This document shows positions 47,890 through 62,457 of a stretch of DNA of 64,000 nt, piece after piece; positions within the stretch are counted from its first letter, which is position 1, and every line of letters starts with the position of its first letter. The DNA is taken from IMG/VR virus record IMGVR_UViG_3300025319_000005, positions 124,001 through 188,000 of that record; one strand, given 5' to 3'. The notes beneath the pieces are model-generated. The model was not told where the DNA came from and made no database searches. It worked only from the letters and a program-made list of their open reading frames with translations. Position numbers and translations under genes: made by a program.

Positions 47890-48357
47890 TTAGTCACCTT
47901 TTGTAGAAATGTTTTTTTCTTGGTTTCTGGTAAGTTCGTTTTCTACACCTATAGATATGCTTCTAAAAGATTCTGGCGATTTTTCAATAATTTTTAAAAT
48001 ACTTTCAAAATCAAATCTTTGAGCCGAAAATTGTTTTGGCTTATTTAAACTTCCACCAACGTCAACTTTCCATACATACCATTTTGTATCTGGCTCTGTG
48101 TATATTACTTTGGATTTTTCCCAATTCTGAATAGCTTCTTCTCCTGTGTTTGAAACTGAATTTGATGGCCAGGAACTTGGGATATTAATACTTTTCTTAA
48201 TTTCGTAAACTTCTGGCTTATTGCTATAATGAACCAAATCAATTAATTTCAACAAAAAATAGTTCATTTCTTCAGTAGAATATTCTCCTGGTTTTGATGT
48301 GTTTTCAAAATATGATTCGAAAAGACACTTTCTTATTATTTTTCTAATTTGTTCCAT
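47890..48357 (-). CDS. protein with shared leader
   Basis: MEQIRKIIRKCLFE; TATTTA at 48364-48369. Confidence 0.6.
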   Translation of the reverse strand: MEQIRKIIRKCLFESYFENTSKPGEYSTEEMNYFLLKLIDLVHYSNKPEVYEIKKSINIPSSWPSNSVSNTGEEAIQNWEKSKVIYTEPDTKWYVWKVDVGGSLNKPKQFSAQRFDFESILKIIEKSPESFRSISIGVENELTRNQEKNISTKGD

Positions 48358-48394
48358 TGATGATAAATAGATTTAAAATTCTATTTATCTTTGT

Positions 48395-48850
48395 ATGAGA
48401 AACATCAGAAAAATGATAAGGAAAATCTTAATAGAGGAATCAAAACCCACGGTTGTTTATTCTGCTGTTGTTATTGAGAAACTTGAAGGTATTGGGAAGT
48501 TGGATTTGATTTTTAGTAAGTACATCGAAAACGGTTGGCAAAAACCGGTTCATTATCATATGACAATCGGACCGGGAAAATTTCCTGAGAGCTTGTATTT
48601 AAAAGGAGATTTAGATAAAGAAGTAACATTAGAAATAACGTCTGTAGGAATTTCAGAAAATGCTATAGCATTGGGAGTTTCAGGATATTATTCAAGAAAT
48701 GACAATCCACACATTACTATTGCTTTCAATAAAGAAAACGGAGGAAATCCGGAAGATAGCAAAGTGATTGAAAATTGGGGACATATTGATAATTTTTATG
48801 TGACTGGAATAATAAGAGAAGTTGGCGAAAATAATTTAGTTATTAAATAA
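48395..48850 (+). CDS. 2H phosphoesterase (cyclic phosphodiesterase-like) with shared leader
   Basis: two HxT motifs (YHMTI, PHITI); MRNIRKMIRKILIE. Confidence 0.75.
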   Translation: MRNIRKMIRKILIEESKPTVVYSAVVIEKLEGIGKLDLIFSKYIENGWQKPVHYHMTIGPGKFPESLYLKGDLDKEVTLEITSVGISENAIALGVSGYYSRNDNPHITIAFNKENGGNPEDSKVIENWGHIDNFYVTGIIREVGENNLVIK

Positions 48851-48854
48851 TTAG

Positions 48855-48933
48855 TACCTTCAATAGGATTCGAACCTACATTTTCAGCTCCGTTACACTT
48901 ATTGAGTCCGTAGCTCAATGTGGCTATAAAGGC
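48855..48933 (-). ncRNA. D-arm-less tRNA-Arg(ACG)-like RNA
   Basis: acceptor GCCTTTA/TGAAGGT, ATTGAG-CTACGGA-CTCAAT, canonical T arm GTAGG-TTCGAAT-CCTAT; no D arm, 21-nt extra region. Confidence 0.65.
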
Positions 48934-48934
48934 A

Positions 48935-49621
48935 TTATATTAATTCATATCGTTTTGCCCACTTTCTCACCGCAACATCACTAACTCCAAATTTTCTACC
49001 AAGTGCACAATATGAATTATTTTCTATCATTTCTTTTAATTCTTCTTTAGAGGGTCTGTTTTTTACTTTTCTAAAATTTAATCTAGGTACATATTTTCTC
49101 GTTGTTTTTTTATTTGTTTTATTTTTTTTTGCATTTTTTCTGTCTACGCCAATTTTACCACGGCAATGAGTTTCTAATGTGAAATTGCAGTTTGGACATA
49201 AAAATCTTAAGTTTTCTAATCTATTATCATTATTTATTCCGTTTTCGTGGTCAATAATTAAACTAATTTTTTTACCTCTCCATATTTCTCCTTGTCCACA
49301 TTCTTTACATTCATATTCTATCATGTTATTATCTCGTATTCTTTTTTTTAAACAAGCCCTTGCAACAGAACTGTTTTCACAAAAAATTTCTTCATCACTT
49401 TTCCTTAATAATCTGTCTTCATTAAACATTTTTTTAGCAAAATCACTACGGTTTAAAAAATGAGAAGTATCTATTGACCATTTATTTAAATTTGTTTTAA
49501 GTATTTTATAAGATGAAGAAGAATCGCTTCTTCCAGATTTTACTATAACATCTCTAAATGTGATGCTTTCAGATACTAATTTTTGTAATTCTTCTTTTGT
49601 ATATTCTTTATGTTCTTTCAT
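48935..49621 (-). CDS. HNH homing endonuclease
   Basis: CKECG..IIDHENGINNDNRLENLRFLCPNC; C-terminal HTH. Confidence 0.9.
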   Translation of the reverse strand: MKEHKEYTKEELQKLVSESITFRDVIVKSGRSDSSSSYKILKTNLNKWSIDTSHFLNRSDFAKKMFNEDRLLRKSDEEIFCENSSVARACLKKRIRDNNMIEYECKECGQGEIWRGKKISLIIDHENGINNDNRLENLRFLCPNCNFTLETHCRGKIGVDRKNAKKNKTNKKTTRKYVPRLNFRKVKNRPSKEELKEMIENNSYCALGRKFGVSDVAVRKWAKRYELI

Positions 49622-49678
49622 AATTCTAACTTATTTTAATGTAAATAGGTTAGAATTTTTTAATAAAGTAAATAGTTG

Positions 49679-49754
49679 AGGATAAGAAGAGAATTAAACT
49701 CCTGTTAAATATGTTTTGCAGACATATCCCGATTTCAACATTGGGTACTTATCC
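49679..49754 (-). tRNA. tRNA-Cys(GCA)
   Basis: GGATAAG/CTTATCC, CT-GCA-AA, U73, T loop TTTAATT. Confidence 0.8.
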
Positions 49755-49768
49755 TTGTAAAAATTAAA

Positions 49769-50038
49769 AAAGTAAAATCCTAAGTATAGCCGCGATTTTG
49801 TTCTATCTCATCATTTATCTGAAGGTATTGCTACCAACTGGAGACTTTAAACGTCTACCACGCACCTACCCGACTATCAACAACGTAAAGGTTCCCCGTC
49901 TACAGTCTGTTTGGCTTGCATCCTATGTTGCGGAAGTACATACGCTATTTGTTATAGCTTCTTCCTCCTTTTAAAAGATGTCGCGAACTTCCTCTCGATT
50001 TTAAGAATCGAGCGATGAGTCCTTCAGGATTTTACTTT
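49769..50038 (-). ncRNA. rnpB: RNase P RNA, compact A-type-like with reduced specificity domain
   Basis: P1 AAAGTAAAATCCT/AGGATTTTACTTT; CR-I GAGGAAGTTCGCGAC; GCAAGCCAAA; GGGTAGGTGC; AGATAAATGAT; CR-V ACAAAATCGCGGCTATA; P4 with bulged U. Confidence 0.88.
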
Positions 50039-50043
50039 TCTTG

Positions 50044-50115
50044 AGGCTCCACTGACAATCGATGTCAGGACTCAAATTTACAAGATTCGTGTTTTGCCAC
50101 TTAAACTACGGAGCC
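50044..50115 (-). tRNA. tRNA-Thr(TGT)
   Basis: 72-nt cloverleaf, CT-TGT-AA, T loop ATCGATT. Confidence 0.85.
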
Positions 50116-50131
50116 ATTATTTGTTCTTATG

Positions 50132-50205
50132 TGGAATCTACCGGCATTGAACCGGTCTCTCAGGCGTGCAAGGCAAGTGTTCTAAGCCAAATGAACTAAG
50201 ACCCC
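50132..50205 (-). tRNA. tRNA-Ala(TGC)
   Basis: G3:U70, CT-TGC-AC; anticodon stem has two mismatches. Confidence 0.85.
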
Positions 50206-50243
50206 AATTTAATTTGTTCAAAGTACAAATTATTAAAAACTTT

Positions 50244-50319
50244 TGGCGAGTATGACCGGTCCTGACCCGGCGACCTCCTCATAGACAGTGAGGCATTCTT
50301 CCAACTGAACTACACACTC
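50244..50319 (-). tRNA. tRNA-Asp(GTC)
   Basis: cloverleaf, CT-GTC-TA, G73, encoded CCA, T loop GTCAGGA. Confidence 0.9.
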
Positions 50320-50332
50320 ATTATTTTTTAAA

Positions 50333-50639
50333 AAAGTAAGACGCCATTTCGCTGATAGCGTTTTTTGTGTTCTGTTTAATGCGCCAAAGAACATCTGATT
50401 ATGTTCAGCATTTAGCGTTCATGCTTGGTTATTATAACATACTAACATTCCTAATATTGTCTGATTACCTATTTTGAGTTTGCATAGTAGGTTGATTTTT
50501 ATTTCCAGGGTAAAAATCAACAAACAAACCTAACGTCTGATAAACTTTATTTTTCATCCGGTAAACGTTTTGTACATTGTTTAGTTCATTAGGCTAAAAC
50601 AACACGTCTTTTTCACGGACAACATTAGTAACTTACTTT
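50333..50639 (-). ncRNA. unidentified ~307-nt structured RNA
   Basis: closing stem AAAGTAAG/CTTACTTT, perfect 11-bp hairpin GTTGATTTTTA/TAAAAATCAAC and further hairpins; no long ORF; lies between tRNAs; strand inferred from the operon. Confidence 0.65.
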
Positions 50640-50644
50640 TCTTG

Positions 50645-50718
50645 TAGTGCATCTGAGAATTGAACTCAGTACTTCCACGTTATCGGCGTGGCACTCTGGA
50701 CCGATGAGTTAATGCACT
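50645..50718 (-). tRNA. tRNA-Ile(GAT)
   Basis: cloverleaf, CC-GAT-AA (C33). Confidence 0.88.
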
Positions 50719-50732
50719 GTTTTTATTTAAAG

Positions 50733-50805
50733 TCTAGGTGGCCTGCTCCGACCAGGCGGTCTCCAGTTCCCAAAACTGGCGGATTTCCAACTTTCCCACA
50801 CCTAG
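50733..50805 (-). tRNA. tRNA-Pro(TGG)
   Basis: C1:G72, TT-TGG-GA, T loop GTCGGAG. Confidence 0.87.
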
Positions 50806-50842
50806 AAATTTTGTTTATCTTTCCAAACTGTCTTTTAATAAG

Positions 50843-50906
50843 AGTTCAAGCTCGGTTATCCACCGATTCGAAGGACTGCATTAGCCTTCTCTGCAGACAC
50901 TTGAAC
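50843..50906 (-). ncRNA. 64-nt tRNA-sized element lacking D and anticodon arms
   Basis: acceptor-like GTTCAAG/CTTGAAC, T-like hairpin TCGG-TGGATAA-CCGA, alternative central stems. Confidence 0.5.
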
Positions 50907-50908
50907 AT

Positions 50909-50984
50909 TGGAGCGAAAAACCAGGTTCAAACTGGCGACCCCCAGAGTGGAAATCTGGCGCTCTATCAACTGAGCTATTTTCGC
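50909..50984 (-). tRNA. tRNA-Gly(TCC)
   Basis: cloverleaf, TT-TCC-AC, U73, CCA. Confidence 0.9.
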
Positions 50985-51073
50985 TTATGTATATAATTCT
51001 CTCAGACCATATTACCAAGATTTACTTTGGACTCACCGTATTTTAAAAGTGAGCAGAATTGTATTTAATTAAA

Positions 51074-52021
51074 TTATTCTAATAATAATTCATCAATTGT
51101 TAAAATTGAATTTAAATTATCTATTGTTTTTTTAAATATCATTTTAACATTAATGTTGTTTTGTTCTAATACTAAACTCATTTTTGTTTTATCTATTATT
51201 GAATAATATCCTTTAGTTTCTATGTATAAGTTAAAATTTGGCAAATAAAAATCTGGCACATACGTTTTTTCAACACCTTCTTTAATATATTGAATATATA
51301 TTTTTCTAATCCACAATATTTTATTGTCATTTAACCATTGCGACATTTTTAATTCATATTTTCCTCTTAAAGAATATTCTTCACCAATAATATTTTTTTG
51401 TTTATAAAATTTCACATGTTTAAAATTGTTACTTATTTCATTTTCTTCTAACATCTTGGAGTGAGATTTGCTAATTTTCGATTTTTGTTCAGAAGAAAGT
51501 GGCTTTCCTAATTGGTGATGTATTCTCTTACCAGTAGCATACATTTCTTTTTGTTGCTCAGATGCTTTATTTACCCTATTATCAGTTTCCTTTGTAAGTC
51601 CTCTTGACCATCCCATTTTTGATTTAGTCTCTGCATTACTGTATTTTTTATTTTTATATTCAACTCCATCCGGTGTATGCATTTGAAATATATGACCACA
51701 TATACCAAGTTTGTGAAATATTAATTCGCAATGAGGACATTTATATTTATCTACATCAACTTTCCAAGATTCATCTACTGTTATTTGTTTTTTATTAACT
51801 GTATTACATTTATTATAATGCCTTTCAAAATTAGAAACAGAAATATTTTTATTACATTTATCACAACATTTTGTGTTTTTAGGTTTTCCAAGTAAAGAAA
51901 TACTTAAATTTTTTAATCTTTCTTTTAACTTTGGATTAGATTCACAATTTACTATATGAGCACCAAATTGTTGTGGGATCTCAAACTCAAAAGACTCTTT
52001 GCAATGCGGACAAGTTTTCAT
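51074..52021 (-). CDS. homing endonuclease-like protein (Zn fingers + PD-(D/E)xK)
   Basis: CPHC and CDKC fingers; YVPDFYLP..LYIETKGY. Confidence 0.8.
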   Translation of the reverse strand: MKTCPHCKESFEFEIPQQFGAHIVNCESNPKLKERLKNLSISLLGKPKNTKCCDKCNKNISVSNFERHYNKCNTVNKKQITVDESWKVDVDKYKCPHCELIFHKLGICGHIFQMHTPDGVEYKNKKYSNAETKSKMGWSRGLTKETDNRVNKASEQQKEMYATGKRIHHQLGKPLSSEQKSKISKSHSKMLEENEISNNFKHVKFYKQKNIIGEEYSLRGKYELKMSQWLNDNKILWIRKIYIQYIKEGVEKTYVPDFYLPNFNLYIETKGYYSIIDKTKMSLVLEQNNINVKMIFKKTIDNLNSILTIDELLLE

Positions 52022-52090
52022 ACTTTTTTATTATAAATAGTATAAAAAATTGCAGGTTAGAAAATTGTTAGCACGTTATTGTTTTTTGAG

Positions 52091-52173
52091 TGGGAGTTGA
52101 TGGAGACGAGCCACCCGAGTTTTAAAACAACCGATTTACAGTCGGTCCCGCTACCCCTACGGAATAAACTCCC
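52091..52173 (-). tRNA. tRNA-Tyr(GTA)
   Basis: CT-GTA-AA, long variable arm, T loop CTCGTCT. Confidence 0.87.
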
Positions 52174-52185
52174 ATTTTAATGTTG

Positions 52186-52257
52186 CACAGACGGTTATAA
52201 TCGAAATAACTACGTGTAGTTTTTGGAGAACTCACCGACACCAAGCCTGTCGTCTGT
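52186..52257 (-). tRNA. tRNA-Trp(CCA)
   Basis: CT-CCA-AA, G73, canonical T arm; weak D arm. Confidence 0.75.
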
Positions 52258-52296
52258 ATTTTATCTATTTTTTAAGCTGTAAGATAATTAGCTAAG

Positions 52297-52368
52297 TAGC
52301 GAAAACTGGAATCGAACCAATGTAGACACAGCTTATGAGACTGGTGGGAAACCAACATCCTTTTCGCA
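52297..52368 (-). tRNA. tRNA-Met(CAT), initiator-like
   Basis: 1:72 mismatch, CT-CAT-AA; weak D arm. Confidence 0.75.
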
Positions 52369-52381
52369 ATATATTTTTTTG

Positions 52382-52454
52382 TAGCCCCTGCCGGTCCTGA
52401 CCCGACGACTTCATTCATGTAAAAAATGCACTCTACCAACTGAGTTAAGGGGCT
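52382..52454 (-). tRNA. tRNA-Val(TAC)
   Basis: cloverleaf, TT-TAC-AT, T loop GTCAGGA. Confidence 0.88.
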
Positions 52455-52459
52455 ATTAG

Positions 52460-52533
52460 TAGCATATATCAGAATCAAACTGATGACCTTCCTCATATGA
52501 AAAGGACGCTCTAATCAACTGAGCTAATATGCT
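52460..52533 (-). tRNA. tRNA(CAT): elongator Met or Ile2
   Basis: cloverleaf, TT-CAT-AT; identity not resolvable from sequence. Confidence 0.85.
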
Positions 52534-52543
52534 ATTTAAAAAG

Positions 52544-52615
52544 AGCGGGTGATGAGGATTAAACTCACGGCCTCATCCTTGGCAAGGATGCGCTCTATCG
52601 CTGAGCTACACCCGC
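52544..52615 (-). tRNA. tRNA-Gly(GCC)
   Basis: cloverleaf, TT-GCC-AA, U73. Confidence 0.92.
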
Positions 52616-52691
52616 TTTTTTGATTATCAATATGTCAAATAACTCTGCAAACTTTTAAGTCATTGCTCGACTTGTAAACTTTTTAAGCAAC

Positions 52692-52727
52692 AAAAAACCC
52701 GAACCTTTTTTAAGTCCGGGTGTGTTA
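52692..52727 (-). terminator. attenuator terminator of tRNA operon 1
   Basis: ACCCGGAC/GTTCGGGT + U6; 5' arm overlaps the antiterminator partner TAACACACCC. Confidence 0.85.
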
Positions 52728-52760
52728 TGTTGTTTCCCTTTTAAGTTTTTATATCTTACT

Positions 52761-52889
52761 TCATGAAACAAAATGTTTTAACACACCCATATTATCGCGG
52801 CTATAATCGCCAGGGGTAATACACGCATACCCGACTGTCGGCATGACTGCCCAAATCGTTGTAATTGTTGTATGTGTTAAATTTTTCAT
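52761..52889 (-). CDS. attenuator leader peptide 1 (42 aa)
   Basis: MKNLTHTTITTIWAVMPTVGYACITPGDYSRDNMGVLKHFVS; between promoter and terminator upstream of tRNA operon 1. Confidence 0.85.
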   Translation of the reverse strand: MKNLTHTTITTIWAVMPTVGYACITPGDYSRDNMGVLKHFVS

Positions 52890-52916
52890 TGAAGATGTTT
52901 TCTTTTTAATTAAACT

Positions 52917-53002
52917 TAAATAGTATAAAAAATTATTTTCTCAAATATTTCTTTCGACCAATTATAACGCAAAGATATAATTAAAGTTTAATAAAAAGCA
53001 AA
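52917..53002 (-). promoter_or_regulatory. tandem promoters of tRNA operon 1
   Basis: TTTG-N21-TATCTTTG (52970-53002) and TATTTA (52917-52922). Confidence 0.75.
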
Positions 53003-53031
53003 TTTATTTTCATTTATTTTTTATTTAACTT

Positions 53032-53094
53032 GTAAAATCCTGATATTCAGCTAAATAATTTTTTGTAAAATCCTAAACATAATCGTAAAATCCT
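53032..53094. repeat. three GTAAAATCCT direct repeats
   Basis: at 53032, 53065 and 53085. Confidence 0.75.
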
Positions 53095-53201
53095 GTCATT
53101 GATAATATTAAACAAAAAATCCACAATTTTTTTAAGCAAGGGAGCCAACGAATTTATTCGTTGGAGTATGTCAGTCAATAATATTTCCTTGCAATTTGTT
53201 T

Positions 53202-53405
53202 TTACCAACCTTCTTTAGCAACTCCGGATGCAACTGCAGCTTCTGCGTTAGCAGAGCTCATTATAGCACACATTTTATGTCCTTCTTTAGTTTCTCCTTT
53301 ACATACGTATCCACCTTTTGCGTTTTTAGATATGATAGGATTAACGAAAGTTTGTTTGCTTTTTAATTTCATACAATATCCTTCTAATACGATTAATGTG
53401 CTCAT
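53202..53405 (-). CDS. small DUF5679-like protein (paralog of 54800-55000)
   Basis: YCMKLK..KGGYVCKGETKEGHKM..SANAEAAVASGV. Confidence 0.7.
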   Translation of the reverse strand: MSTLIVLEGYCMKLKSKQTFVNPIISKNAKGGYVCKGETKEGHKMCAIMSSANAEAAVASGVAKEGW

Positions 53406-53509
53406 GATTTTTAGTTTTAAGTTTTTTATAAATATGAAATATTTTATAAAACAAGTTTTAATATATGTTTATGTTCTAAATTAGCTTATATTTATATAAA
53501 AACAAGCTC

Positions 53510-53680
53510 ATGAAAAATTTAAAAAAAATAATAGAAGAAACAGTAAGTAAAGTTCTGGGTGAAGGCGATTTTTTAACACATCAAATAAAAAATTCAATAA
53601 GCGTGTTAAATAATGTTTTCAAAGACAACTTAGTTGCAAAGATAAACGAAACAAATGATAAAGATAAACGAAACAAATGA
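53510..53680 (+). pseudogene. 5' part (leader) of the ART-like gene, detached by a 22-nt duplication
   Basis: MKNLKKIIEETVSKVLGE..; removing one repeat copy fuses it in frame to 53655-54263. Confidence 0.7.
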
Positions 53681-53681
53681 T
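53638..53681. repeat. 22-nt perfect tandem duplication
   Basis: AAAGATAAACGAAACAAATGAT x2. Confidence 0.95.
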
Positions 53682-54263
53682 AGTGTTATTGATGTTTATA
53701 TTAAGAAATACAATATAAATGCATTAACAAAAATAGATAAAACGATAGAAAATTTAGGATATTTTATTTCTATTTTTAGTATAAATGGATTTCAAAAGAA
53801 ATTTAACAAAGATTCATTTTTTAAAAAAATAAAAGACTTAAAAGAATTAACTCCAATATACCTAAAGCTGGAGAAAAAAATGGACTCAAATGAAGATATA
53901 GATACAATTATCCCATCTATGTTATATCACATTACACATGAAAGACATCTCGCAAAAATCAAGAAAATAGGTTTAGTTCCAAAATCTAAATCTAAAAAAT
54001 CAGCTCATCCTGAAAGAATATATTTAGCGTGGAATGAAGAATCTGCTATAAAATTAGTAAAAGAATTTTCAGATTTAGAATACGAATTTGAACATAATTA
54101 TGTTTTATTAAAAATTGACACAAGTAAAATTTCTGAGTTTAGACGTGATAAAAATTTCAAATTACATAATGACCCAAACTTTACAGATGGTTATTTTACA
54201 TATGATAATATACCTCCTGCTGCAATAAATTTTGAAAATATGAAATTAATAAACCTTGAATAA
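53655..54263 (+). CDS. Tpt1/KptA-like ADP-ribosyltransferase-fold protein
   Basis: LYHITH....IKKIGLVP, IYLA, LLKID, NIPPAAI. Confidence 0.6.
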   Translation: MIKINETNDSVIDVYIKKYNINALTKIDKTIENLGYFISIFSINGFQKKFNKDSFFKKIKDLKELTPIYLKLEKKMDSNEDIDTIIPSMLYHITHERHLAKIKKIGLVPKSKSKKSAHPERIYLAWNEESAIKLVKEFSDLEYEFEHNYVLLKIDTSKISEFRRDKNFKLHNDPNFTDGYFTYDNIPPAAINFENMKLINLE

Positions 54264-54795
54264 TATGAGTTTGTTAGAAAAAATTAAAATAGAAAGATTT
54301 ATTTCGGAAGATATTGACGAAGTTAAACAGTTAATTAAAAACATACATTCAAAAATCTGTTTTAATGAAACAAATATTCACATTTATAATAATTTAATGT
54401 ATAAACTTTTTTTTAACGGTTATAGTTTTCTTTTGGATTTTTCATTAAAAGTAACATATAGAAAAAAAATAATAGGAGTTATGTTATTATCTGACTTTTC
54501 GTTTTATTGGCTATTAGAAACATATAAAGAAGATGACAAAAACATAAGCAAAAAAATAAAAAAATATAAGAACAAAGAAGGTTTAAGGAGTGTTTTTTTT
54601 GGAATTGATAGGAAATATCAAAAAAAAGGATTAGGCTCTAAAATGATTGAATATATACAAAAAAACTATAAGCAGTTTGATTATTTGTGGGGAATTCAAC
54701 ATAAAGAGATTTCAAATATGGAATTTTTCTTAAAAAGAAGAAAAGTTGTTGCAGAAATAGGAAATTCCGTATATACTGTGCAGGATTTGAAATAA
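54256..54795 (+). CDS. GNAT acetyltransferase
   Basis: FGIDRKYQKKGLGSKMI. Confidence 0.75.
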   Translation: MNNMSLLEKIKIERFISEDIDEVKQLIKNIHSKICFNETNIHIYNNLMYKLFFNGYSFLLDFSLKVTYRKKIIGVMLLSDFSFYWLLETYKEDDKNISKKIKKYKNKEGLRSVFFGIDRKYQKKGLGSKMIEYIQKNYKQFDYLWGIQHKEISNMEFFLKRRKVVAEIGNSVYTVQDLK

Positions 54796-54799
54796 AAGC

Positions 54800-55000
54800 T
54801 TAAAACCCTTCTTTAGTAACTCCAGATGCTACGGCAGCTTCTGCGTTGGCTTTACTCATTAATAGACTCATCTTATGTCCATCTTTACTTTCGCCCTTTG
54901 CAATGTACCCACCCTTTTTAGTTAAGCTAATAACAGCATTAACCATTACTCCCTTTGATTTTGTCTTAAGACAATAAGCCTCTAATACTACTTTTTCCAT
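54800..55000 (-). CDS. small DUF5679-like protein (paralog of 53202-53405)
   Basis: YCLKTK..KGGYIAKGESKDGHKM..KANAEAAVASGV. Confidence 0.7.
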   Translation of the reverse strand: MEKVVLEAYCLKTKSKGVMVNAVISLTKKGGYIAKGESKDGHKMSLLMSKANAEAAVASGVTKEGF

Positions 55001-55038
55001 TTTTTTTGGTTTTATAGTAAATATTAAAAATTTTTATT

Positions 55039-55386
55039 TTAAGTCGGTGATGTTATTAATTGAAATTTAGTAGGATGCGACAATCTATAATCAACTTGTC
55101 TTTCATCAACATATTCTCGATAATTAACATAACCTTTAACATATGGAGTTACGCGAGCATCGAAAAAAATAACATCTCCGTTATTTAACGCTCCTAATTT
55201 CTCAAATCCTTTTGTTTTGTTAAACCACAAATGGTCAGTAACAATTTTATCAGACTTATCCTTAATATCTTTTAAGAGTATTGTTTCTACAGGATATCCA
55301 TGATAATTCTTCTTTGTTCCAAATTTCTCAAATATTCCACTAAATCTGTCCCGTATATTTTCTATTTTTTCTAAATCTTTTCTCAT
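55039..55386 (-). CDS. conserved phage hypothetical protein
   Basis: VTDHLWF..FDARV..YVKGY..DYRLSHPTK. Confidence 0.6.
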   Translation of the reverse strand: MRKDLEKIENIRDRFSGIFEKFGTKKNYHGYPVETILLKDIKDKSDKIVTDHLWFNKTKGFEKLGALNNGDVIFFDARVTPYVKGYVNYREYVDERQVDYRLSHPTKFQLITSPT

Positions 55387-55955
55387 TGATAAAACCCTTT
55401 TCTTTTTATATAATTAGCAACTTGCGGTGCTAAAAAATCTTTCACATCTCTATTTTCCTTTATCTCGTTTCGGATAAATGTGGAAGACATTTCAATTAAA
55501 TTAACATCAAACATTTTTACTTTTGGATGTAAAATTAGATTACCGCCATCGCTGGAGCTACGTGAATATACATAAATTTGATATTCTTCAAGTATTTTTT
55601 GATAATCTTTCCACTTGTGTAAGTTTTCTAAATTATCAGTTCCCATTATTATAACAAATTCATTTTCTTTAAATGTTTCTTTTAATAAATTGAGCGTATC
55701 TATAGTATACGAAGGTTTTGATAAATTAAATTCAATATCACTGGCTCTCATATGTTCATTATCAATTAATGCCATATTAACCATTTTTAACCTTTCTTTT
55801 TCTGATAGTAGAGAATTTTTATCCTTGAGAGGATTGTGAGGAGATATTATAAACCACACACATTCCAATTCGGTATGTTCAAGCATGTAAGACGCCAATA
55901 TTGTGTGACCGTTGTGGATTGGATTAAAACTACCGAAGAATAAACCTATTTTCAT
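55383..55955 (-). CDS. nadD: nicotinate-nucleotide adenylyltransferase
   Basis: FFGSFNPIHNGH, SYTIDTL, IMGTDN, WKDY, MSSTFIR; start reassigned to 55955. Confidence 0.93.
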   Translation of the reverse strand: MKIGLFFGSFNPIHNGHTILASYMLEHTELECVWFIISPHNPLKDKNSLLSEKERLKMVNMALIDNEHMRASDIEFNLSKPSYTIDTLNLLKETFKENEFVIIMGTDNLENLHKWKDYQKILEEYQIYVYSRSSSDGGNLILHPKVKMFDVNLIEMSSTFIRNEIKENRDVKDFLAPQVANYIKRKGFYQ

Positions 55956-56037
55956 ATGTGATATTATTAAACGAAGATAATCATTATAATGTTGCAACTA
56001 ACTTTTTTAAACTATTTATTGAAAAAAGAAATATAAA

Positions 56038-57411
56038 ATGAATAATAAAGAACTAAGAAAATCGATAAGAAGGATTTTAAAGGAAAATCTTGAAAATTCT
56101 GATTGGGTGAATGCCAGTGATGCTCAAAAAGCTGCAATGCAAGATATAGACTCAGAAGATGAATTTGAACACTTAGGAACTAATAGGTTTGAAAAAGATT
56201 TTGATGTTGAAGATTTTCTATATGATTTAGAAGCTCAAAAAAATATGTCTGAGCCATCTGTAAAAAGATTAGAAAAACAAATTGGGCAATTAAAAAGATT
56301 TGGAAAGGGTTCTTTGAATGAATTATCGCCAGAAATAAGACAATCCGCACTTAAAAAAGCTGTTGATTATATTGAACAACCTGGAGATACCTATCATAAA
56401 GACCCGCTCCAATATATTAAGAAAAAAAACCAAGCAAATTCATTTATTTCTCATGTTAATCCTGAGTTAAAAAAAGAAGCTATGGAAATAGCAAAAATGA
56501 TAGATGTAAATTGTGAAAGTCGTATAGAAAAAGAAGCGGTAGGAAGTACACTTGAACCAAATGTTGTATTATATTTTGGTCAAAACATTGCAGATTTAAG
56601 TAATCAAATACTTAAAATTGCCATTAAAAAAGATAATCATACATGGGAAACCAAAAAATTTATTCCTGAAAATATTCAAAGAAGATTGGCTAATTTTATA
56701 AAAAAGATTCAAACAAAAGAAATATCTAGTCCAGTTAAACAATTGAATGAGAGATTTCTTGGTGGATGGCATTATTTCGCAACTCCAGAAGGTAAAGAAG
56801 AATATATTAAAGACCTCGAGTCTAAAAAGATTAATGCAAAAGGAGAAGAATTAGAGCAAATTGAAAAAGAACTTAAAAAGTTAAAATCAATAAAACCAAA
56901 ATCCTTAAAAGAAGAAACATCAAAACTTGACAAGCCAAAAGATTCTGCAGGAAATTCAATATCATCCGGAGTGAGAGTTGAAGATTTAGAGTCGGGTAGT
57001 GCTGGACGAGTTGAGAGATTTGGTATTGACGACAAAGGACAATTAACAGTTCATGTTGCTTGGATAACAAAATATGGACAGATAGCTCCAAAGTCCATTG
57101 TTTATCCCAAAAATATAATTGTTAAAGATTCTGCAAAAAAGATAACAGACGAAGGAATTAAAGATACTTTAAAAAATATTTATAAAGAATTGAATCCTAT
57201 TGAAAAATGGAAACAAATGAAAGAAAATCGTAAAAAGCTCGAAAAAGAAGTTAGTGATTTACGAAGAGAAGTTTCTGAAAAGGAAAAAGAATTAGAAAAA
57301 ATAGTGAATAGTAATCATATTAAAGCTGATGTAAGTAATGATGTTGACGAAGGAATTGGAGCTGGATTATCACTTCCAATAAAAAAAGGAGCCGGAAGCA
57401 GATTTAAATAA
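56038..57411 (+). CDS. multi-module protein with shared leader
   Basis: MNNKELRKSIRRILKE; LNE/LNE/LKEE/VDE junctions; TATTTA at 56013-56018. Confidence 0.6.
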   Translation: MNNKELRKSIRRILKENLENSDWVNASDAQKAAMQDIDSEDEFEHLGTNRFEKDFDVEDFLYDLEAQKNMSEPSVKRLEKQIGQLKRFGKGSLNELSPEIRQSALKKAVDYIEQPGDTYHKDPLQYIKKKNQANSFISHVNPELKKEAMEIAKMIDVNCESRIEKEAVGSTLEPNVVLYFGQNIADLSNQILKIAIKKDNHTWETKKFIPENIQRRLANFIKKIQTKEISSPVKQLNERFLGGWHYFATPEGKEEYIKDLESKKINAKGEELEQIEKELKKLKSIKPKSLKEETSKLDKPKDSAGNSISSGVRVEDLESGSAGRVERFGIDDKGQLTVHVAWITKYGQIAPKSIVYPKNIIVKDSAKKITDEGIKDTLKNIYKELNPIEKWKQMKENRKKLEKEVSDLRREVSEKEKELEKIVNSNHIKADVSNDVDEGIGAGLSLPIKKGAGSRFK

Positions 57412-57418
57412 AACTATT

Positions 57419-58432: not shown

Positions 58433-58459
58433 TTGAAATTATTATTTTTTAATATAAAG

Positions 58460-58532
58460 TGCTTCCAGTTGGACTTGAACCAACGACCCGAAAATTAAGA
58501 ATTTCCTACTCTACCATCTGAGCTATGAAAGC
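58460..58532 (-). tRNA. tRNA-Lys(CTT)
   Basis: cloverleaf, TT-CTT-AA. Confidence 0.92.
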
Positions 58533-58620
58533 AATAATTTATAATGTATTATAGATATATGTTGAGTAAAATCCACAGAATGTTCTATTTTATGGATTGT
58601 GCTCAACAAATATGTAATTG

Positions 58621-58694
58621 TGTGTCCGACAAGATTTGAACTTGTGACCTCCGCATTAAAAGTGCGGTATTCTAACCAGCTGAATTACGAACAC
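58621..58694 (-). tRNA. tRNA-Lys(TTT)
   Basis: cloverleaf, CT-TTT-AA. Confidence 0.92.
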
Positions 58695-58698
58695 ATAG

Positions 58699-58785
58699 TG
58701 TACCCAGAAAGATTCGAACTTTCAACGGCCTTTCGGCTCCCCACAGGGTAAAAACCTGTTGCTCTACCAATTGAGCCATGGGTAC
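58699..58785 (-). tRNA. tRNA with Lys(TTT) anticodon and 19-nt variable arm
   Basis: ACAGG-TTTTTAC-CCTGT; variable region GGGGAGCCGAAAGGCCGTT. Confidence 0.85.
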
Positions 58786-58789
58786 AAAT

Positions 58790-58826
58790 AAAAAAGCCTG
58801 AATCTACACAGAGACTCAGGCTTTTT
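58790..58826 (-). terminator. attenuator terminator upstream of the three tRNA-Lys genes
   Basis: AAAAAGCCTGAGTC/GATTCAGGCTTTTT + U run. Confidence 0.85.
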
Positions 58827-58841
58827 GGACTTATAAAAAAG

Positions 58842-58907
58842 TCAATGAGCTATCGTCCCCGGAGACCAGGGTTTCTTAGATTTTTTTATTTTGATTATTG
58901 TTAACAT
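58842..58907 (-). CDS. attenuator leader peptide 3 (21 aa, Lys-rich)
   Basis: MLTIIKIKKSKKPWSPGTIAH; stop lies inside the antiterminator 5' arm. Confidence 0.8.
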   Translation of the reverse strand: MLTIIKIKKSKKPWSPGTIAH

Positions 58908-59018
58908 TTTGTTTATTTTTTTAAATTAAAAAGAGCCCACACTCAACTGGTGGCTAATTTTTATGAACGAGTATTACCCAAGTTCTGTCATCCACTATGA
59001 CAAATTTCTATTGTTATT

Positions 59019-59371: not shown

Positions 59372-59387
59372 TTTATTTATGTTTTTG

Positions 59388-59461
59388 GGTGCTATATCGG
59401 CTACGACCCGATTACCTTCTGTACCACAAACAGACACTCTACCAATTGAGCTAATAACACC
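59388..59461 (-). tRNA. tRNA-His(GTG)
   Basis: G-1:C73, TT-GTG-GT, T loop GTCGTAG. Confidence 0.9.
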
Positions 59462-59474
59462 ATATTAAATTTGT

Positions 59475-60245
59475 TTAAAATACAAATTTTAAGACTTTAA
59501 TATTATTTACTTTTTCACTATATCCAAAATTTCTAATTTCATCATGTATTTCTATGTGACAATTTGCACAAACCATAATACATTTATCAACTTCTACTTT
59601 TAATCTTTCAAAACCATAAGATTTGCCACCAATAGTAAAATCTTTTTCACTTGGATTTGTATGATGAAATTGTAAAACTGATGTTGATTTATTATATCCA
59701 CAACATTCACATTTCCATCCTTTATATTCAATTAATCTAATTTTACTTCTTTTTCTCCAATCTATAACAGCCTGACTTTTGGTTTTAGTTTTTTGTCTTT
59801 TTTTATTTGTTTTAATCAAATCATCAGAAATGTAATTTCTAATTGTTGTCCTATCTACCTTAAAATAAGCGGCTGTTTTTCTTAAAGACTTACTTTCTAT
59901 ATAAAAATTAACAACTTCTATTTCAATAAGTTCTTTTTTCTTAAATGTACCACTTGATTTATTTAATCCATACAAATTACATATTTTAATTAACTTATCT
60001 TCTCCAATGTCCAAAATTGACCTTATTTCGTCATAGCTTTTCAATTCTCTTCTGTAAGCAATTATTTTGTTTATAACTTCATCAGTTATTCCAATTAAAA
60101 AACTGTTTCTTACTCCGCCAAGTCCAACATTATTTATGTGATAAGACACAGTGCTTTTTGAACACTTTAATTGTTCAACTATTTCTTTTATAGTTGAGCC
60201 TTTTTCTCTTAAAGAGATAATTTTATTTTTCAAACCTTTATCCAT
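59475..60245 (-). CDS. HNH homing endonuclease with HTH repeats (paralog of 15297-15992)
   Basis: CECCG..LQFHHTNPSEKDF..KCIMVCANCHIEIH; start reassigned to 60245. Confidence 0.87.
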   Translation of the reverse strand: MDKGLKNKIISLREKGSTIKEIVEQLKCSKSTVSYHINNVGLGGVRNSFLIGITDEVINKIIAYRRELKSYDEIRSILDIGEDKLIKICNLYGLNKSSGTFKKKELIEIEVVNFYIESKSLRKTAAYFKVDRTTIRNYISDDLIKTNKKRQKTKTKSQAVIDWRKRSKIRLIEYKGWKCECCGYNKSTSVLQFHHTNPSEKDFTIGGKSYGFERLKVEVDKCIMVCANCHIEIHDEIRNFGYSEKVNNIKVLKFVF

Positions 60246-60316
60246 ATTATTAACTTTATTTGTTAATAAATATGGGATAAAATTCAAAAAAACAAAATTT
60301 ATTTCAAAGAACGTTG

Positions 60317-60388
60317 CGGACCCGCCTGGACTTGAACCAGAAAACGCAGATTAACAATCTGAAGTGATACCAATTTCACCACAGGTCC
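60317..60388 (-). tRNA. tRNA-Asn(GTT)
   Basis: cloverleaf, TT-GTT-AA, G73. Confidence 0.88.
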
Positions 60389-60394
60389 CAATAT

Positions 60395-60715
60395 TTATTT
60401 TTTAATTTCTTCTTTAGTAATAGAATCACCAACCTCTATTACTTTGCCAAAAACTTTTTTTGTCCAACCATTTATTCCTCCTTTATTATTTCCTATTAAA
60501 CAACCTTTTTGTGCATTAATTGCTTTTACTAAATGTGTGTAGAAATTGCCGTGCACTTTCGCATAGACTATATCTCCTACTTTAACTTCATCTATTGTAA
60601 TTGGGGCAATTTTATGTTCTTGTCCCGACTTAATTAAAGGAACCATTGAGTTTCCTTTTTCACTGGTGACGAAAGTCTCACCGTTTTGTAATCTTTCTAA
60701 TTTATAATTTCTCAT
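60395..60715 (-). CDS. S24/S26 peptidase-like protein
   Basis: GNSMVPLI..VGDIVY..HLV. Confidence 0.6.
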   Translation of the reverse strand: MRNYKLERLQNGETFVTSEKGNSMVPLIKSGQEHKIAPITIDEVKVGDIVYAKVHGNFYTHLVKAINAQKGCLIGNNKGGINGWTKKVFGKVIEVGDSITKEEIKK

Positions 60716-60731
60716 TTTTTATTATTTGTTT

Positions 60732-60820
60732 TGGCGGAAAACGGGCAAATCGAATACCATTCAAATTAACGAACCTCTCGCTTAGCAGGCGGAGACAACT
60801 CCCTGGTTGTTTCGTTTTCC
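60732..60820 (-). tRNA. tRNA-Ser(GCT)
   Basis: CT-GCT-AA, long variable arm, G73, CCA. Confidence 0.82.
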
Positions 60821-60847
60821 ATTTATTATTTCAAAGAACATTTTTTG

Positions 60848-60933
60848 CAGAGGCTAAGAGAGTTCAACTCTTACAACCTTTTCAAGTCCTAGCTATTTTC
60901 AAGATAGTGTACCTCCGTCAACTGGGAGCCTCT
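60848..60933 (-). tRNA. tRNA-Ser(TGA)
   Basis: AGAGGCT/AGCCTCT, CT-TGA-AA, long variable arm, G73, T loop TTGAACT. Confidence 0.8.
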
Positions 60934-61012
60934 ATGTTTGCCTATTAACTCTATCACTCACCTAAACGGTGGATTACAGAACTTCGGCAGGATTTTATTC
61001 CTGTTCAGTTAG

Positions 61013-61089
61013 TGGAGATTGCCAGAATTGAACTGGCGTTAATTTCACGGTTCTTCAAACCGCAGCTAGACCGTCTCAGCTAAATCTCC
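61013..61089 (-). tRNA. tRNA-Phe(GAA)
   Basis: cloverleaf, TT-GAA-GA, 9-nt variable region. Confidence 0.88.
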
Positions 61090-61114
61090 ATTATTTTCAA
61101 AAAACGTTATAAAA

Positions 61115-61150
61115 CAAAAAACCCGAACTCTTTTGTAAGTCCGGGTGTGT
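61115..61150 (-). terminator. attenuator terminator of tRNA operon 2
   Basis: ACCCGGACT/AGTTCGGGT + U6; 5' arm overlaps ACACACCCG. Confidence 0.85.
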
Positions 61151-61174
61151 TTATGTTGTTTTAATTTTAATCTT

Positions 61175-61264
61175 TTACGATTCAAAAGGACAATACACAC
61201 CCGCTCGGCTTTTATTACTAAAACTCGATTTGTTAAAATGCTTATGTGTATTATTTGTTGTCAT
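61175..61264 (-). CDS. attenuator leader peptide 2 (29 aa)
   Basis: MTTNNTHKHFNKSSFSNKSRAGVYCPFES. Confidence 0.85.
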   Translation of the reverse strand: MTTNNTHKHFNKSSFSNKSRAGVYCPFES

Positions 61265-61284
61265 TTTGTATTCTTAATATTCTT

Positions 61285-61368
61285 TAAATAGTATAAAAAA
61301 TTATTTTTCTAAAAATTCTTATTATCAATTATAACGCAAAGATATAATTAAAGTTTCAAAAAAGCAAA
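61285..61368 (-). promoter_or_regulatory. tandem promoters of tRNA operon 2
   Basis: TTTG-N20-TATCTTTG (61337-61368) and TATTTA (61285-61290); homologous to 52917-53002. Confidence 0.75.
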
Positions 61369-61404
61369 TTTATTTTGATTTATTTTTTATTTCATTAAAA
61401 AAGG

Positions 61405-61687: not shown

Positions 61688-61692
61688 TGTTT

Positions 61693-62445: not shown

Positions 62446-62457
62446 TTTTTTGTTTTT

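What the first reader, a model, noticed from the sequence alone, without database searches (positions are those of the whole stretch)
52692..52889. Leader-peptide attenuator whose codons spell out the tRNA inventory of operon 1
Seen: a 42-codon ORF sits between the tandem promoters and a U-tailed terminator, upstream of tRNAs for Gly, Met/Ile, Val, Trp, Tyr, Pro, Ile, Asp, Ala, Thr, Cys and an Arg(ACG)-like RNA. Residues 7-32 (TTITTIWAVMPTVGYACITPGDYSRD) use all 12 of those amino acids and only one other residue (S30). The peptide has no Gln or Glu, and no Leu, Lys, Asn, Phe or His in that stretch. Classical four-segment pairing is present: 1 (UUUAACACAU, 52872-52881) with 2 (GUGUGUUAAA); 2 (GGGUGUGUUA, 52779-52788) with 3 (UAACACACCC, 52718-52727); and 3:4 as the terminator. 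Established: trp/his/thr-type ribosome-mediated attenuation. Inference: stalling on any of these codons (uncharged or cleaved host tRNA) lets 2:3 form and switches on the phage replacement tRNAs. I know of no described attenuator controlling a tRNA operon with a multi-amino-acid sensor.
Basis: partly seen in the sequence, partly recalled or inferred. Interest (0 to 1): 0.95.

Follow-up and report, generated by a model that had tools for sequence, protein, structure and literature searches.

The report
Codon-barcoded attenuators switching phage tRNA operons
A large uncultivated phage places, in front of each block of its own tRNA genes, a tiny reading frame plus a stop-transcription hairpin, and the frame is written in the codons that the block's tRNAs read, so the phage probably makes its tRNAs only when decoding of those codons falters; no such control of tRNA genes turned up in the papers I searched.

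Summary
The window holds a paralogous module (61368..61113) before the Phe/Ser/Asn/His tRNAs, with a leader rich in Asn, His, Lys, Phe and Ser. It also holds a third, unrelated Lys-rich leader plus terminator directly before three Lys tRNAs. A DNA pattern that contained no tRNA information found seven or eight divergent leader types in other phage contigs, and every one is followed by a same-strand tRNA array. In seven type representatives, 84% of leader residues before segment 2 belong to the array's own amino-acid set, against 35% after segment 2. The true leader-array pairing is the single best of 5,040 permutations. Other reading frames and nucleotide shuffles do not reproduce the match. 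Weak points: the 1:2 pairing is no stronger than in shuffled sequence, the codon-level match is modest, the invariant 2:3 core was imposed by my search pattern, and nothing shows translation or read-through. No description was found in the literature. Verdict: a new variant of leader-peptide attenuation that autoregulates viral tRNA operons. High interest.

The parts
52970..53002 (-). Promoter-like site of Bacteroidota type (TTTG, 21 nt, TAtcTTTG) upstream of leader 1
   Evidence: Pattern match. The same block is repeated upstream of leader 2 (families D3/D4). The pattern is not significantly enriched in the window as a whole (14 found against 8.5 expected).
52917..52931 (-). Conserved motif TTTTTATACTATTTA between the promoter-like site and the leader ATG; possibly a second promoter, function unknown
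   Evidence: Three exact copies in the window, at 52931, 61299 and 52048 on the minus strand, each 20-40 nt before an ATG. Conserved in type-1 orthologues.
52761..52889 (-). Leader ORF 1, 42 codons. Codons 5-29 are dominated by Thr, Ile, Val, Ala, Gly, Pro, Met, Asp, Cys, Trp and Tyr.
   Evidence: Orthologues of 43-46 codons keep the frame and the stop position. Composition statistics.
52872..52881 (-). Segment 1 (UUUAACACAU), codons 3-6 of the leader; pairs with segment 2
   Evidence: The MFE fold of the free leader pairs it with segment 2. Its position (ATG+7 to +25) and the ACAYAU core are conserved across types, with compensatory flank changes. The duplex energy is not better than in shuffles.
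52779..52788 (-). Segment 2 (GGGUGUGUUA), inside the ORF at codons 34-37
   Evidence: Predicted duplex energy with segment 3 is -15.8 kcal/mol.
52718..52727 (-). Segment 3 (UAACACACCC); forms the antiterminator with segment 2 and overlaps the 5' arm of the terminator
   Evidence: The pairing extends 3 bp beyond the 7-bp core here, and up to 11 bp in L213.
52691..52721 (-). Intrinsic terminator (segments 3:4): 9-10 bp stem, 5-nt loop, U-run
   Evidence: The stem covaries across types.
49678..52615 (-). tRNA operon 1. Called at default threshold: Gly-GCC, Met-CAT, Val-TAC, Gly-TCC, Pro, Ile-GAT, Asp, Ala, Thr-TGT, Cys. Sub-threshold, between Val-TAC and Gly-TCC: Met, Trp, Tyr. Interrupted by an endonuclease-like ORF (52021..51074) and an RNase P-like RNA.
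61113..61368 (-). Paralogous module 2: promoter-like site 61368..61337, motif 61299..61285, leader ORF 2 at 61264..61175 (29 codons, rich in Asn, His, Lys, Phe, Ser), segment 2 at 61202..61196, terminator 61146..61121
59387..61089 (-). tRNA operon 2a: Phe-GAA, sub-threshold Ser-GCT (60820-60732), Asn-GTT, His-GTG, with small ORFs in between
58791..58907 (-). Third, sequence-unrelated module: Lys-rich leader ORF 58907..58842 (21 codons, 5 Lys), a small hairpin, and a 15-bp terminator at 58826..58791
   Evidence: (fold z = -4.1). Orthologues carry five consecutive Lys codons.
58459..58785 (-). tRNA operon 2b: Lys-TTT, Lys-TTT, Lys-CTT, starting 6 nt after the Lys-leader terminator hairpin (58791)

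Best explanation
Each module is a ribosome-mediated (leader-peptide) transcription attenuator that gates a phage tRNA operon.

Proposed sequence of events: transcription starts at the promoter about 100 nt upstream, and a ribosome loads on the short ORF.

- If the ribosome reads the ORF quickly, it runs over segment 2 and on to the stop codon about 25 nt further. Segment 3 is then free to form the 3:4 terminator, and RNA polymerase stops before the first tRNA gene.
- If no ribosome loads, segment 1 holds segment 2 and the terminator also forms.
- If the ribosome is delayed on codons whose decoding tRNAs are scarce, segment 2 stays free. This is clearest for the early codons that lie on or just after segment 1. 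Segment 2 then pairs with segment 3 (GGGUGUG with CACACCC), the terminator cannot form, and the tRNA genes are transcribed.

The ORF is written mostly in the codons served by the tRNAs behind it. The operon's own products would therefore speed up leader translation and shut the operon down again, giving a demand-driven negative feedback on decoding capacity.

Shown by sequence and comparison: the ORF, the terminator, the mutually exclusive complementarities, the invariable linkage to tRNA arrays, and the frame-specific and position-specific tracking of leader composition with array content.

Inferred: that the ORF is translated, that stalling switches the RNA fold, and what causes the shortage in nature (host tRNA cleavage by defence nucleases, phage-induced loss of host tRNAs, codon demand late in infection, or starvation).
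For: Anatomy. The free-RNA MFE has 1:2 plus the terminator (z = -2.35).

Paralogue in the same genome with opposite composition matched to its own operon: (Fisher P = 1.4e-4).

Family: a pattern with no tRNA content retrieved 7-8 leader types from IMG/VR and metagenomes. All are followed by same-strand tRNA arrays.

Tracking: in-set fraction before segment 2 is 0.70-0.96, and the identity pairing is unique best of 5,040 permutations. Other frames give 0.17-0.57 (one at 0.70). Nucleotide shuffles give P <= 0.003 in 8 of 9 leaders. Binomial P against proteome background reaches 8e-9.

Position effect: 129/154 before segment 2 against 23/65 after it.

Codon level: 210 of 256 in-set codons are decodable by the operon's anticodons, against 180 expected. 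In other modules, ATA codons precede tRNA-Ile(UAU) and CTT codons precede tRNA-Leu(GAG).

Footprint emulation: a footprint on codons 2-10 gives the antiterminator; one on late codons or the stop gives the terminator.

Structure: the terminator stem and the flanks of 2:3 and 1:2 covary.

Independent modules with the same logic.
Against: - The 1:2 duplex energy is not better than in dinucleotide shuffles of the ORF for most members.
- In 7 of 18 sequences the free-RNA MFE already shows the antiterminator, so the two states are nearly isoenergetic and kinetics must decide.
- The 7-bp core of 2:3 never varies and was imposed by my search pattern. A scan allowing one compensated change found no further member. 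Independent support for 2:3 therefore rests on flank extensions and on the first scan, which used only segment 3.
- Many matched codons lie 30-70 nt downstream of segment 1, where a stalled ribosome would not mask it.
- For the Lys leader the candidate antiterminator is much weaker than the terminator.
- The codon-level excess is modest and depends on wobble assumptions.
- Some conserved leader residues (Ser, Arg, Asn before segment 2) are outside the set.
- In type 6 the motif that resembles segment 1 lies upstream of the ATG, by my reading of the sequence; the duplex scan found only a weak 1:2 pairing there.
- The types are related, so the seven representatives are not fully independent.
- There are no transcript or ribosome data.
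Confidence: 0.75

Rival explanations
1. Factor-dependent antitermination. The invariant GGGUGUG/CACACCC helix next to the terminator is the binding site or target of a phage or host protein (or small RNA) that decides read-through. The short ORF is incidental or only sets timing.
For: The 7-bp core is invariant across otherwise very divergent leaders, with no compensated variants found. This is what a sequence-specific recognition site would look like. The 1:2 pairing is not above chance.
Against: It does not explain why ORF composition tracks the downstream tRNA set in a frame-specific and position-specific way. It does not explain why sequence-unrelated modules without this core show the same logic. 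The invariance is partly a by-product of how members were found. No candidate factor was identified.
Confidence: 0.08
2. The leader is translated and attenuates transcription, but it senses general translation speed or amino-acid starvation (charging) rather than the abundance of particular tRNAs. The composition match would only reflect shared history of each leader with its array.
For: Classical attenuators respond to charged tRNA, so starvation would also stall the ribosome. The codon-level match to the anticodons present is only modestly above background. The leader types are homologous and inherited together with their arrays.
Against: Two leaders in one genome have diverged to opposite compositions matching their own arrays. 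In-set residues turn over in position while the bias is kept, for example Thr positions among type-1 orthologues. Non-homologous modules converge on the same rule, including rare codon choices: ATA with Ile-UAU and CTT with Leu-GAG.
Confidence: 0.1
3. An ordinary small phage gene followed by an ordinary terminator that ends the upstream transcription unit. The tRNAs would have their own promoters, and the complementarities and composition match would be coincidence.
For: In AT-rich DNA short ORFs and hairpins are frequent. The promoter scan is not informative: 79 sites found against 78 expected. A conserved 45-nt block lies between the terminator and the first tRNA in type 1 and could hide a promoter.
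Against: No canonical promoter was recognised in that block, by my reading. The ORF-terminator unit has its own promoter-like site directly upstream in both window copies. The unit is always linked to tRNA arrays. Permutation, frame and shuffle controls reject coincidence.
Confidence: 0.04

Closest known systems
E. coli thr operon leader (thrL) and ilv leaders (ilvL, ivbL): multi-amino-acid leader-peptide attenuators
   Same: Short ORF, four-segment RNA with a terminator and a mutually exclusive antiterminator, and control codons for more than one amino acid. From my own knowledge, the thr leader mixes Thr and Ile codons. Leader 1 here begins its control region with Thr-Thr-Ile-Thr-Thr-Ile.
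   Different: Those leaders gate amino-acid biosynthesis enzymes and sense 2-3 related amino acids. Here the gated genes are tRNAs, the control codons cover 6-11 amino acids that have in common only that their tRNAs lie downstream, and the element is viral. There is no Rfam leader-family match.
E. coli pheST attenuator (pheM leader)
   Same: Leader-peptide attenuation applied to a component of the translation apparatus and tied to the state of a tRNA. Closest in regulatory logic (own knowledge).
   Different: It gates a synthetase gene, with a single amino acid and a cellular operon. Here the product that is sensed (the tRNA) is itself the product of the gated genes, giving direct autoregulation.
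T-box riboswitches
   Same: Transcription attenuation that reads the state of a specific tRNA upstream of translation-related genes.
   Different: T-boxes bind uncharged tRNA directly through a specifier codon and need no ribosome or ORF. No T-box match in the Rfam scans. Here the sensor is a translated ORF.
Phage tRNA arrays as counter-defence or codon compensation (phage T5 tRNA against PARIS, PMC11464382; mycobacteriophage tRNAs, PMC10264068)
   Same: Phage-encoded tRNA clusters thought to replace host tRNAs that are depleted or cleaved. Homing-endonuclease-like ORFs lie between the tRNA genes in this window.
   Different: The abstracts of those papers concern what the tRNAs do, and I did not read their full text. 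None of my literature searches found demand-sensing control of phage tRNA transcription.

Membership tests
Ribosome-mediated (leader-peptide) transcription attenuators | Short translatable ORF in the 5' leader, between the promoter and the first regulated gene | tested here: met
   42-codon ATG ORF at 52889..52761. The frame, the start and the stop position are conserved in orthologues, and all length differences are multiples of 3. Translation itself is not shown.
Ribosome-mediated (leader-peptide) transcription attenuators | Intrinsic terminator between the ORF and the regulated genes | tested here: met
   Hairpin 52721..52697 with a U-run. The stem covaries across types. The first tRNA starts 82 nt downstream.
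Ribosome-mediated (leader-peptide) transcription attenuators | Antiterminator (2:3) that excludes the terminator (3:4) by sharing segment 3 | tested here: met
   GGGUGUGUUA pairs with UAACACACCC at -15.8 kcal/mol and shares ACCC with the terminator arm. Flank extensions reach 11 bp. A masked-ribosome fold switches to 2:3. Caveat: the 7-bp core was imposed by the search pattern and never varies.
Ribosome-mediated (leader-peptide) transcription attenuators | Segment 1 within the translated region that sequesters segment 2 when no ribosome is stalled | tested here: inconclusive
   A conserved ACAYAU core lies at ATG+7 to +25, with compensatory flank changes. It is present in the MFE of 11 of 18 leaders. 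The duplex energy is not better than in dinucleotide shuffles. In type 6 the candidate motif lies upstream of the ATG, by my reading.
Ribosome-mediated (leader-peptide) transcription attenuators | Control codons in the ORF are cognate to what the regulated genes supply | tested here: met
   84% of residues before segment 2 are in the operon's tRNA set, against 35% after it. The true pairing is the best of 5,040 permutations, with frame and shuffle controls. Window cross-table P = 1.4e-4.
Ribosome-mediated (leader-peptide) transcription attenuators | Regulated genes encode amino-acid biosynthesis enzymes or aminoacyl-tRNA synthetases (as in all described cases known to me) | tested here: not met
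   The downstream genes are tRNAs interspersed with homing-endonuclease-like ORFs. This is the point of novelty rather than a mechanistic mismatch.
Ribosome-mediated (leader-peptide) transcription attenuators | Read-through rises when the cognate charged tRNA is limiting and depends on leader translation | not testable with these tools
   Needs reporter, in vitro or Term-seq/Ribo-seq experiments.
Rfam curated leader families (Thr, His, Trp, Leu, Phe leaders and relatives) | Match to the family covariance model | tested here: not met
   No leader-family hit at gathering score in the whole window, nor at E <= 1 in 48000-64000. The only 'leader' hit is L10_leader at 58781-58898, 27.7 bits against a gathering score of 44, E = 0.44, taken as chance.
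T-box riboswitch | Specifier loop and T-box motif recognised by the Rfam model; no ORF needed | tested here: not met
   No T-box hit. The element contains a conserved ORF instead.
Protein-dependent processive antitermination (N/nut, Q, put-type) | Dedicated RNA site bound by an antiterminator protein or by RNA polymerase, acting independently of translation | not tested
   No Rfam match and no candidate protein was sought. This kind of system would not explain the codon tracking.

The most novel reading that the evidence does not exclude
A clade of large, uncultivated phages (probably infecting Bacteroidota) runs its tRNA arrays as a set of autoregulated, demand-driven modules. Each sub-operon would be gated by a translated 'codon barcode' listing the codons its tRNAs read, so the virus measures decoding failure codon family by codon family and replaces only what is missing. 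This could serve as an inducible answer to host tRNA-cleaving immunity or to the phage's own destruction of host tRNAs. It would be the first tRNA genes known to be controlled by leader-peptide attenuation, and the first natural attenuator that multiplexes 6-11 amino acids.
Probability: 0.65. Interest if true: 0.93.

Novelty: new variant of a known kind. Interest (0 to 1): 0.9.

Why it matters
From my own knowledge, tRNA genes are generally regarded as promoter-controlled (growth rate, stringent response), and phage tRNA arrays as simply expressed cargo. Several things would follow if these leaders work as the sequence says.

- tRNA supply can be closed-loop regulated by translation itself.
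- The leader gives a direct, genome-encoded statement of which codons each phage tRNA block is meant to serve. That bears on the long debate over why phages carry tRNAs: codon compensation or counter-defence.
- Attenuators would not be limited to one or a few related amino acids. This is of interest for the theory of kinetic RNA switches.
- It would offer compact, programmable sensors of decoding capacity for synthetic biology.
- Several sequence-unrelated modules follow the same rule, which suggests a general principle that could be searched for in other phages and in bacteria.

Tried and rejected
- **Cultured relatives.** blastn of four leader types against about 50,700 GenBank phage records gave no leader match, only tRNA hits. 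No cultured model phage was found.
- **Known RNA families.** Rfam at gathering score and at permissive thresholds gave no leader, T-box or riboswitch family.
- **Covariation in the 2:3 core.** A scan allowing G/A in segment 2 and C/T in segment 3 returned only chance hits. The core gives no covariation evidence.
- **1:2 shuffle test.** Not significant. I therefore rate segment 1 as inconclusive rather than confirmed.
- **Global alignment.** The MAFFT alignment of all types (A1) aligns segments 2-4 well but not segment 1 across types. I used anchored comparisons instead of the pair-counting tool.
- **Bacterial genomes.** The scan of genome contigs found no host amino-acid operon carrying this element. 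It found only three Bacteroidia MAG contigs (L231, L232, L241) with similar leaders before tRNA genes, which may be binned phage DNA. The idea that the phage borrowed a host attenuator of this sequence family is therefore unsupported.
- **Lys-leader homologues.** A pattern scan found only the same three lineages.
- **Lys-leader switch.** Thermodynamic folding never displaced its terminator, so its switching mechanism is unresolved.
- **Phage classification.** PHROGs gave one family of unknown function for ten large ORFs. The phage could not be classified. Host assignment rests only on promoter-like motifs and on the Bacteroidia MAG hits.

Full report
**1. What is in the window**

On the minus strand, a 42-codon ATG ORF runs from 52889 to 52761. 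It is followed by a hairpin at 52721..52697 with a U-run. After a further 82 nt come the tRNA genes Gly-GCC, Met-CAT and Val-TAC, followed further on by Gly-TCC, Pro, Ile-GAT, Asp, Ala, Thr-TGT and Cys.

Segment 3 shares ACCC with the 5' arm of the terminator, so 2:3 and 3:4 exclude each other.

The free leader folds into 1:2 plus the terminator (-49.9 kcal/mol, z = -2.35).

A Bacteroidota-type promoter pattern lies about 100 nt upstream of the ATG. A second conserved motif lies between it and the ATG.

ARAGORN calls Met, Trp and Tyr at 52368-52090 only at a 90% threshold, in the order found in relatives with canonical genes. The 'Arg-like' RNA at 48855-48933 is tRNA-like by Rfam only, and its anticodon is unresolved.

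**2. Chance, within this genome**

Amino acids with a default-threshold tRNA in operon 1 make up 39% of the window's proteome. They make up 22 of the 32 leader residues before segment 2 (P = 6e-4), or 25 of 32 when Trp and Tyr are counted (P = 9e-5). The other two reading frames of the same bases give 0.45 and 0.32, and nucleotide shuffles reach the observed value in 0.05% of trials.

**3. A second copy gives an internal control**

A paralogous promoter-leader-terminator module lies at 61368..61113. It keeps GGGUGUG, CACACCC and a near-identical terminator, but the ORF is different (61264..61175, 29 codons). It precedes Phe, a sub-threshold Ser-GCT, Asn and His tRNAs.

Its control region is built of Asn, His, Lys, Phe, Ser and Thr. 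Eleven of 19 residues are in the set Phe/Asn/His/Lys and only 3 of 19 in the set of operon 1. Leader 1 scores 22/32 and 4/32 the other way round (Fisher P = 1.4e-4).

Between the two copies, the flanks of segment 1 and segment 2 change together: UUAACACA with UGUGUUAA in one, AAUACACA with UGUGUAUU in the other.

**4. A family, always in front of tRNA arrays**

The window is part of a 212.6-kb IMG/VR contig. I searched with a pattern that specifies only segment 2, segment 3 and the end of the terminator. It retrieved seven or eight divergent leader types from viral contigs and metagenomes, alongside GC-rich chance hits and tRNA-plus-terminator hits that are easy to tell apart.

Every true member with sequence downstream is followed by a same-strand tRNA array. 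The leaders differ, and each resembles its own array:

- A leader whose core is a run of 16 residues made only of Thr, Ala, Arg, Pro, Val and Gly precedes Pro, Thr, Arg, Ala, Val and Gly tRNAs (L109).
- A leader with a 12-residue run of Pro, Thr, Ile, Gly, Cys, Ala, Tyr and Trp precedes Ala, Tyr, Gly, Trp, Pro, Ile, Arg, Thr and Cys tRNAs (L112).
- A Gln-rich leader precedes Gln, His, Pro, Ala, Ser, Met, Gly and Leu tRNAs (L215).
- A leader containing HITTKTNKHNNT precedes Asn, His, Thr, Leu, Lys and Ile tRNAs (L172).

**5. Statistics across types**

I took as leader the longest ATG ORF overlapping segment 2, an objective rule, and used one representative per type.

- The fraction of residues before segment 2 that fall in the array's own set is 0.70-0.96.
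- The true pairing of seven leaders with seven arrays gives the highest total of all 5,040 permutations (5.92 against a mean of 3.65).
- Against proteome background, single-leader P values reach 8e-9.
- The effect is position-specific. It holds for 129 of 154 residues before segment 2 but only 23 of 65 from segment 2 to the stop. This is expected if only codons read before the ribosome reaches segment 2 matter.
- At codon level, 210 of 256 in-set codons can be read by the anticodons present under simple wobble rules, against 180 expected from local codon usage. This is positive but modest, and it depends on the wobble assumptions.

**6. Coding signature**

Type-1 orthologues have 42-46 codons, so all length differences are multiples of three. 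The stop codon stays 25 nt after the start of segment 2 in types 1 and 2.

Among orthologues, Thr positions move while Thr richness is kept. That is the pattern expected for control codons rather than for a folded peptide.

**7. RNA switch**

Predicted 2:3 duplexes are -12 to -24 kcal/mol and extend beyond the imposed core by up to 11 bp. Terminator stems covary freely.

I emulated a 30-nt ribosome footprint. A footprint on early codons (about 2-10) gives the antiterminator. A footprint on late codons or at the stop gives the terminator. Free RNA gives 1:2 plus the terminator in 11 of 18 leaders and the antiterminator in the other 7.

Weak points:
- The 1:2 duplex is no more stable than in shuffled ORFs.
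- The 2:3 core never varies, and a scan for a compensated variant found none.
- Matched codons far downstream of segment 1 do not fit the classical masking geometry. A kinetic race, in which any delay keeps the ribosome off segment 2 while segments 3 and 4 are being made, would accommodate them. This is inference.

**8. Independent modules with the same logic**

Inside operon 2, a 21-codon ORF with five Lys codons (58907..58842) is followed by a 15-bp terminator (58826..58791) and then at once by three Lys tRNAs. Its orthologues carry five consecutive Lys codons before five Lys tRNAs.

I scanned array starts in the fetched loci without using any sequence pattern. This found two more unrelated modules:
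- An ORF whose Ile codons are ATA, ATA, ATT, ATA, ATA lies before tRNA-Ile(UAU).
- An Ile/Lys-rich ORF whose two Leu codons are both CTT lies before Leu(GAG), Lys and Ile tRNAs.

For the Lys leader a candidate antiterminator exists with one compensatory change between lineages, but it is far weaker than the terminator.

**9. Comparison with what is known**

The architecture is that of classical leader-peptide attenuation. The closest cases are the multi-amino-acid thr and ilv leaders and, in logic, the pheST leader.

It is not a member of any Rfam leader family or of the T-box family. It fails the one contextual feature shared by described cases: the regulated genes here are tRNAs.

Full-text searches found no report of leader-peptide attenuation of tRNA genes, in phages or otherwise. 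Recent work frames phage tRNAs as counter-defence (PMC10264068, PMC11464382). I saw nothing on their regulation in the abstracts, and I did not read those papers in full.

No cultured phage with the element was found. The phage is otherwise poorly classifiable. Three Bacteroidia MAG contigs carry similar leaders before tRNA genes.

**10. Verdict**

The element is best described as a new variant of a known kind: an autoregulatory, multiplexed leader-peptide attenuator of viral tRNA operons.

My confidence in the mechanism is about 0.75. The natural trigger is open.

Noticed in passing
window 49771-50032 (minus strand); also L184:7370-7608: A 262-nt RNA resembling a shortened bacterial RNase P RNA lies inside the tRNA operon between tRNA-Thr and tRNA-Cys. 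Rfam RNaseP_bact_a scores 39 bits (gathering score 100) with E = 8e-11 for the 551-nt stretch searched. Helices P1-P4 and the GAGGAA..UC, AGAUAAAUG and ACA.AA motifs align, but about 110 nt of the specificity domain are missing. A syntenic weak hit occurs in a relative (RNaseP_arch, 29 bits, E = 1e-4). A phage-encoded minimal RNase P RNA would be notable in itself.
   Followed up: partly
window 58791-58907 (minus strand): A Lys-rich leader ORF plus a strong terminator lies directly before three Lys tRNAs. Orthologues in L118/L205 and L115 have five consecutive Lys codons. It is unrelated in sequence to the GGGUGUG family, and its antiterminator is unclear.
   Followed up: partly
L108:6528-6651 (+) and L172:4553-4684 (minus strand): Two more unrelated leader-plus-terminator modules in other phage contigs. 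An ATA-rich Ile leader precedes tRNA-Ile(UAU). An Ile/Lys/CTT-Leu leader precedes Leu(GAG), Lys and Ile tRNAs.
   Followed up: partly
window 52090-52368, 60732-60820 and 48855-48933 (minus strand): Non-canonical tRNA genes missed at default thresholds: Met, Trp and Tyr in operon 1 and Ser-GCT in operon 2, called by ARAGORN only at 90%. There is also an Rfam-only tRNA-like element (34.6 bits) with an unresolved anticodon. They may be decaying copies or unusual functional tRNAs.
   Followed up: partly
window 51074-52021, 48935-49621 and 59475-60287 (minus strand): ORFs sitting between the tRNA genes look like homing endonucleases or mobile-element proteins: Phage_endo_I, HNH, and HTH/NUMOD1 domains. 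If the attenuators work, these ORFs are under the same control as the tRNAs.
   Followed up: no
window 52917-52931, 61285-61299 and 52034-52048 (minus strand): The exact 15-mer TTTTTATACTATTTA occurs three times, each 20-40 nt before an ATG: both leaders and the endonuclease-like ORF. Near-copies lie at 37448-37462 (minus strand) and 56004-56018 (+). It may be a phage-specific promoter or a translation signal.
   Followed up: no
L049:6676-6769 and L187:8976-9069: A 94-nt tRNA (Rfam 37-39 bits) that ARAGORN reports with a four-base anticodon (AGGG), next to Arg-ACG and Arg-CCT tRNAs in relatives of operon 1. It may be a frameshift-suppressor-like or intron-containing tRNA.
   Followed up: no
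window 59020-59370 (minus strand): An ORF that appears split by a frame change near 59228: an in-frame TAG, with the reading continuing in another frame. It could be a broken gene, a sequencing error or programmed frameshifting.
   Followed up: no
window 53202-53319 and 54800-54917: A 118-nt direct repeat at 75% identity, 1.6 kb apart, just upstream of the leader-1 promoter region.
   Followed up: no
L231, L232 and L241 (Bacteroidia MAG contigs): Elements similar to the GGGUGUG family, with short ORFs, lie before tRNA genes on contigs binned as Bacteroidia. These may be binned phage DNA or prophages. This is the only hint at the host group besides the promoter-like motifs.
   Followed up: partly
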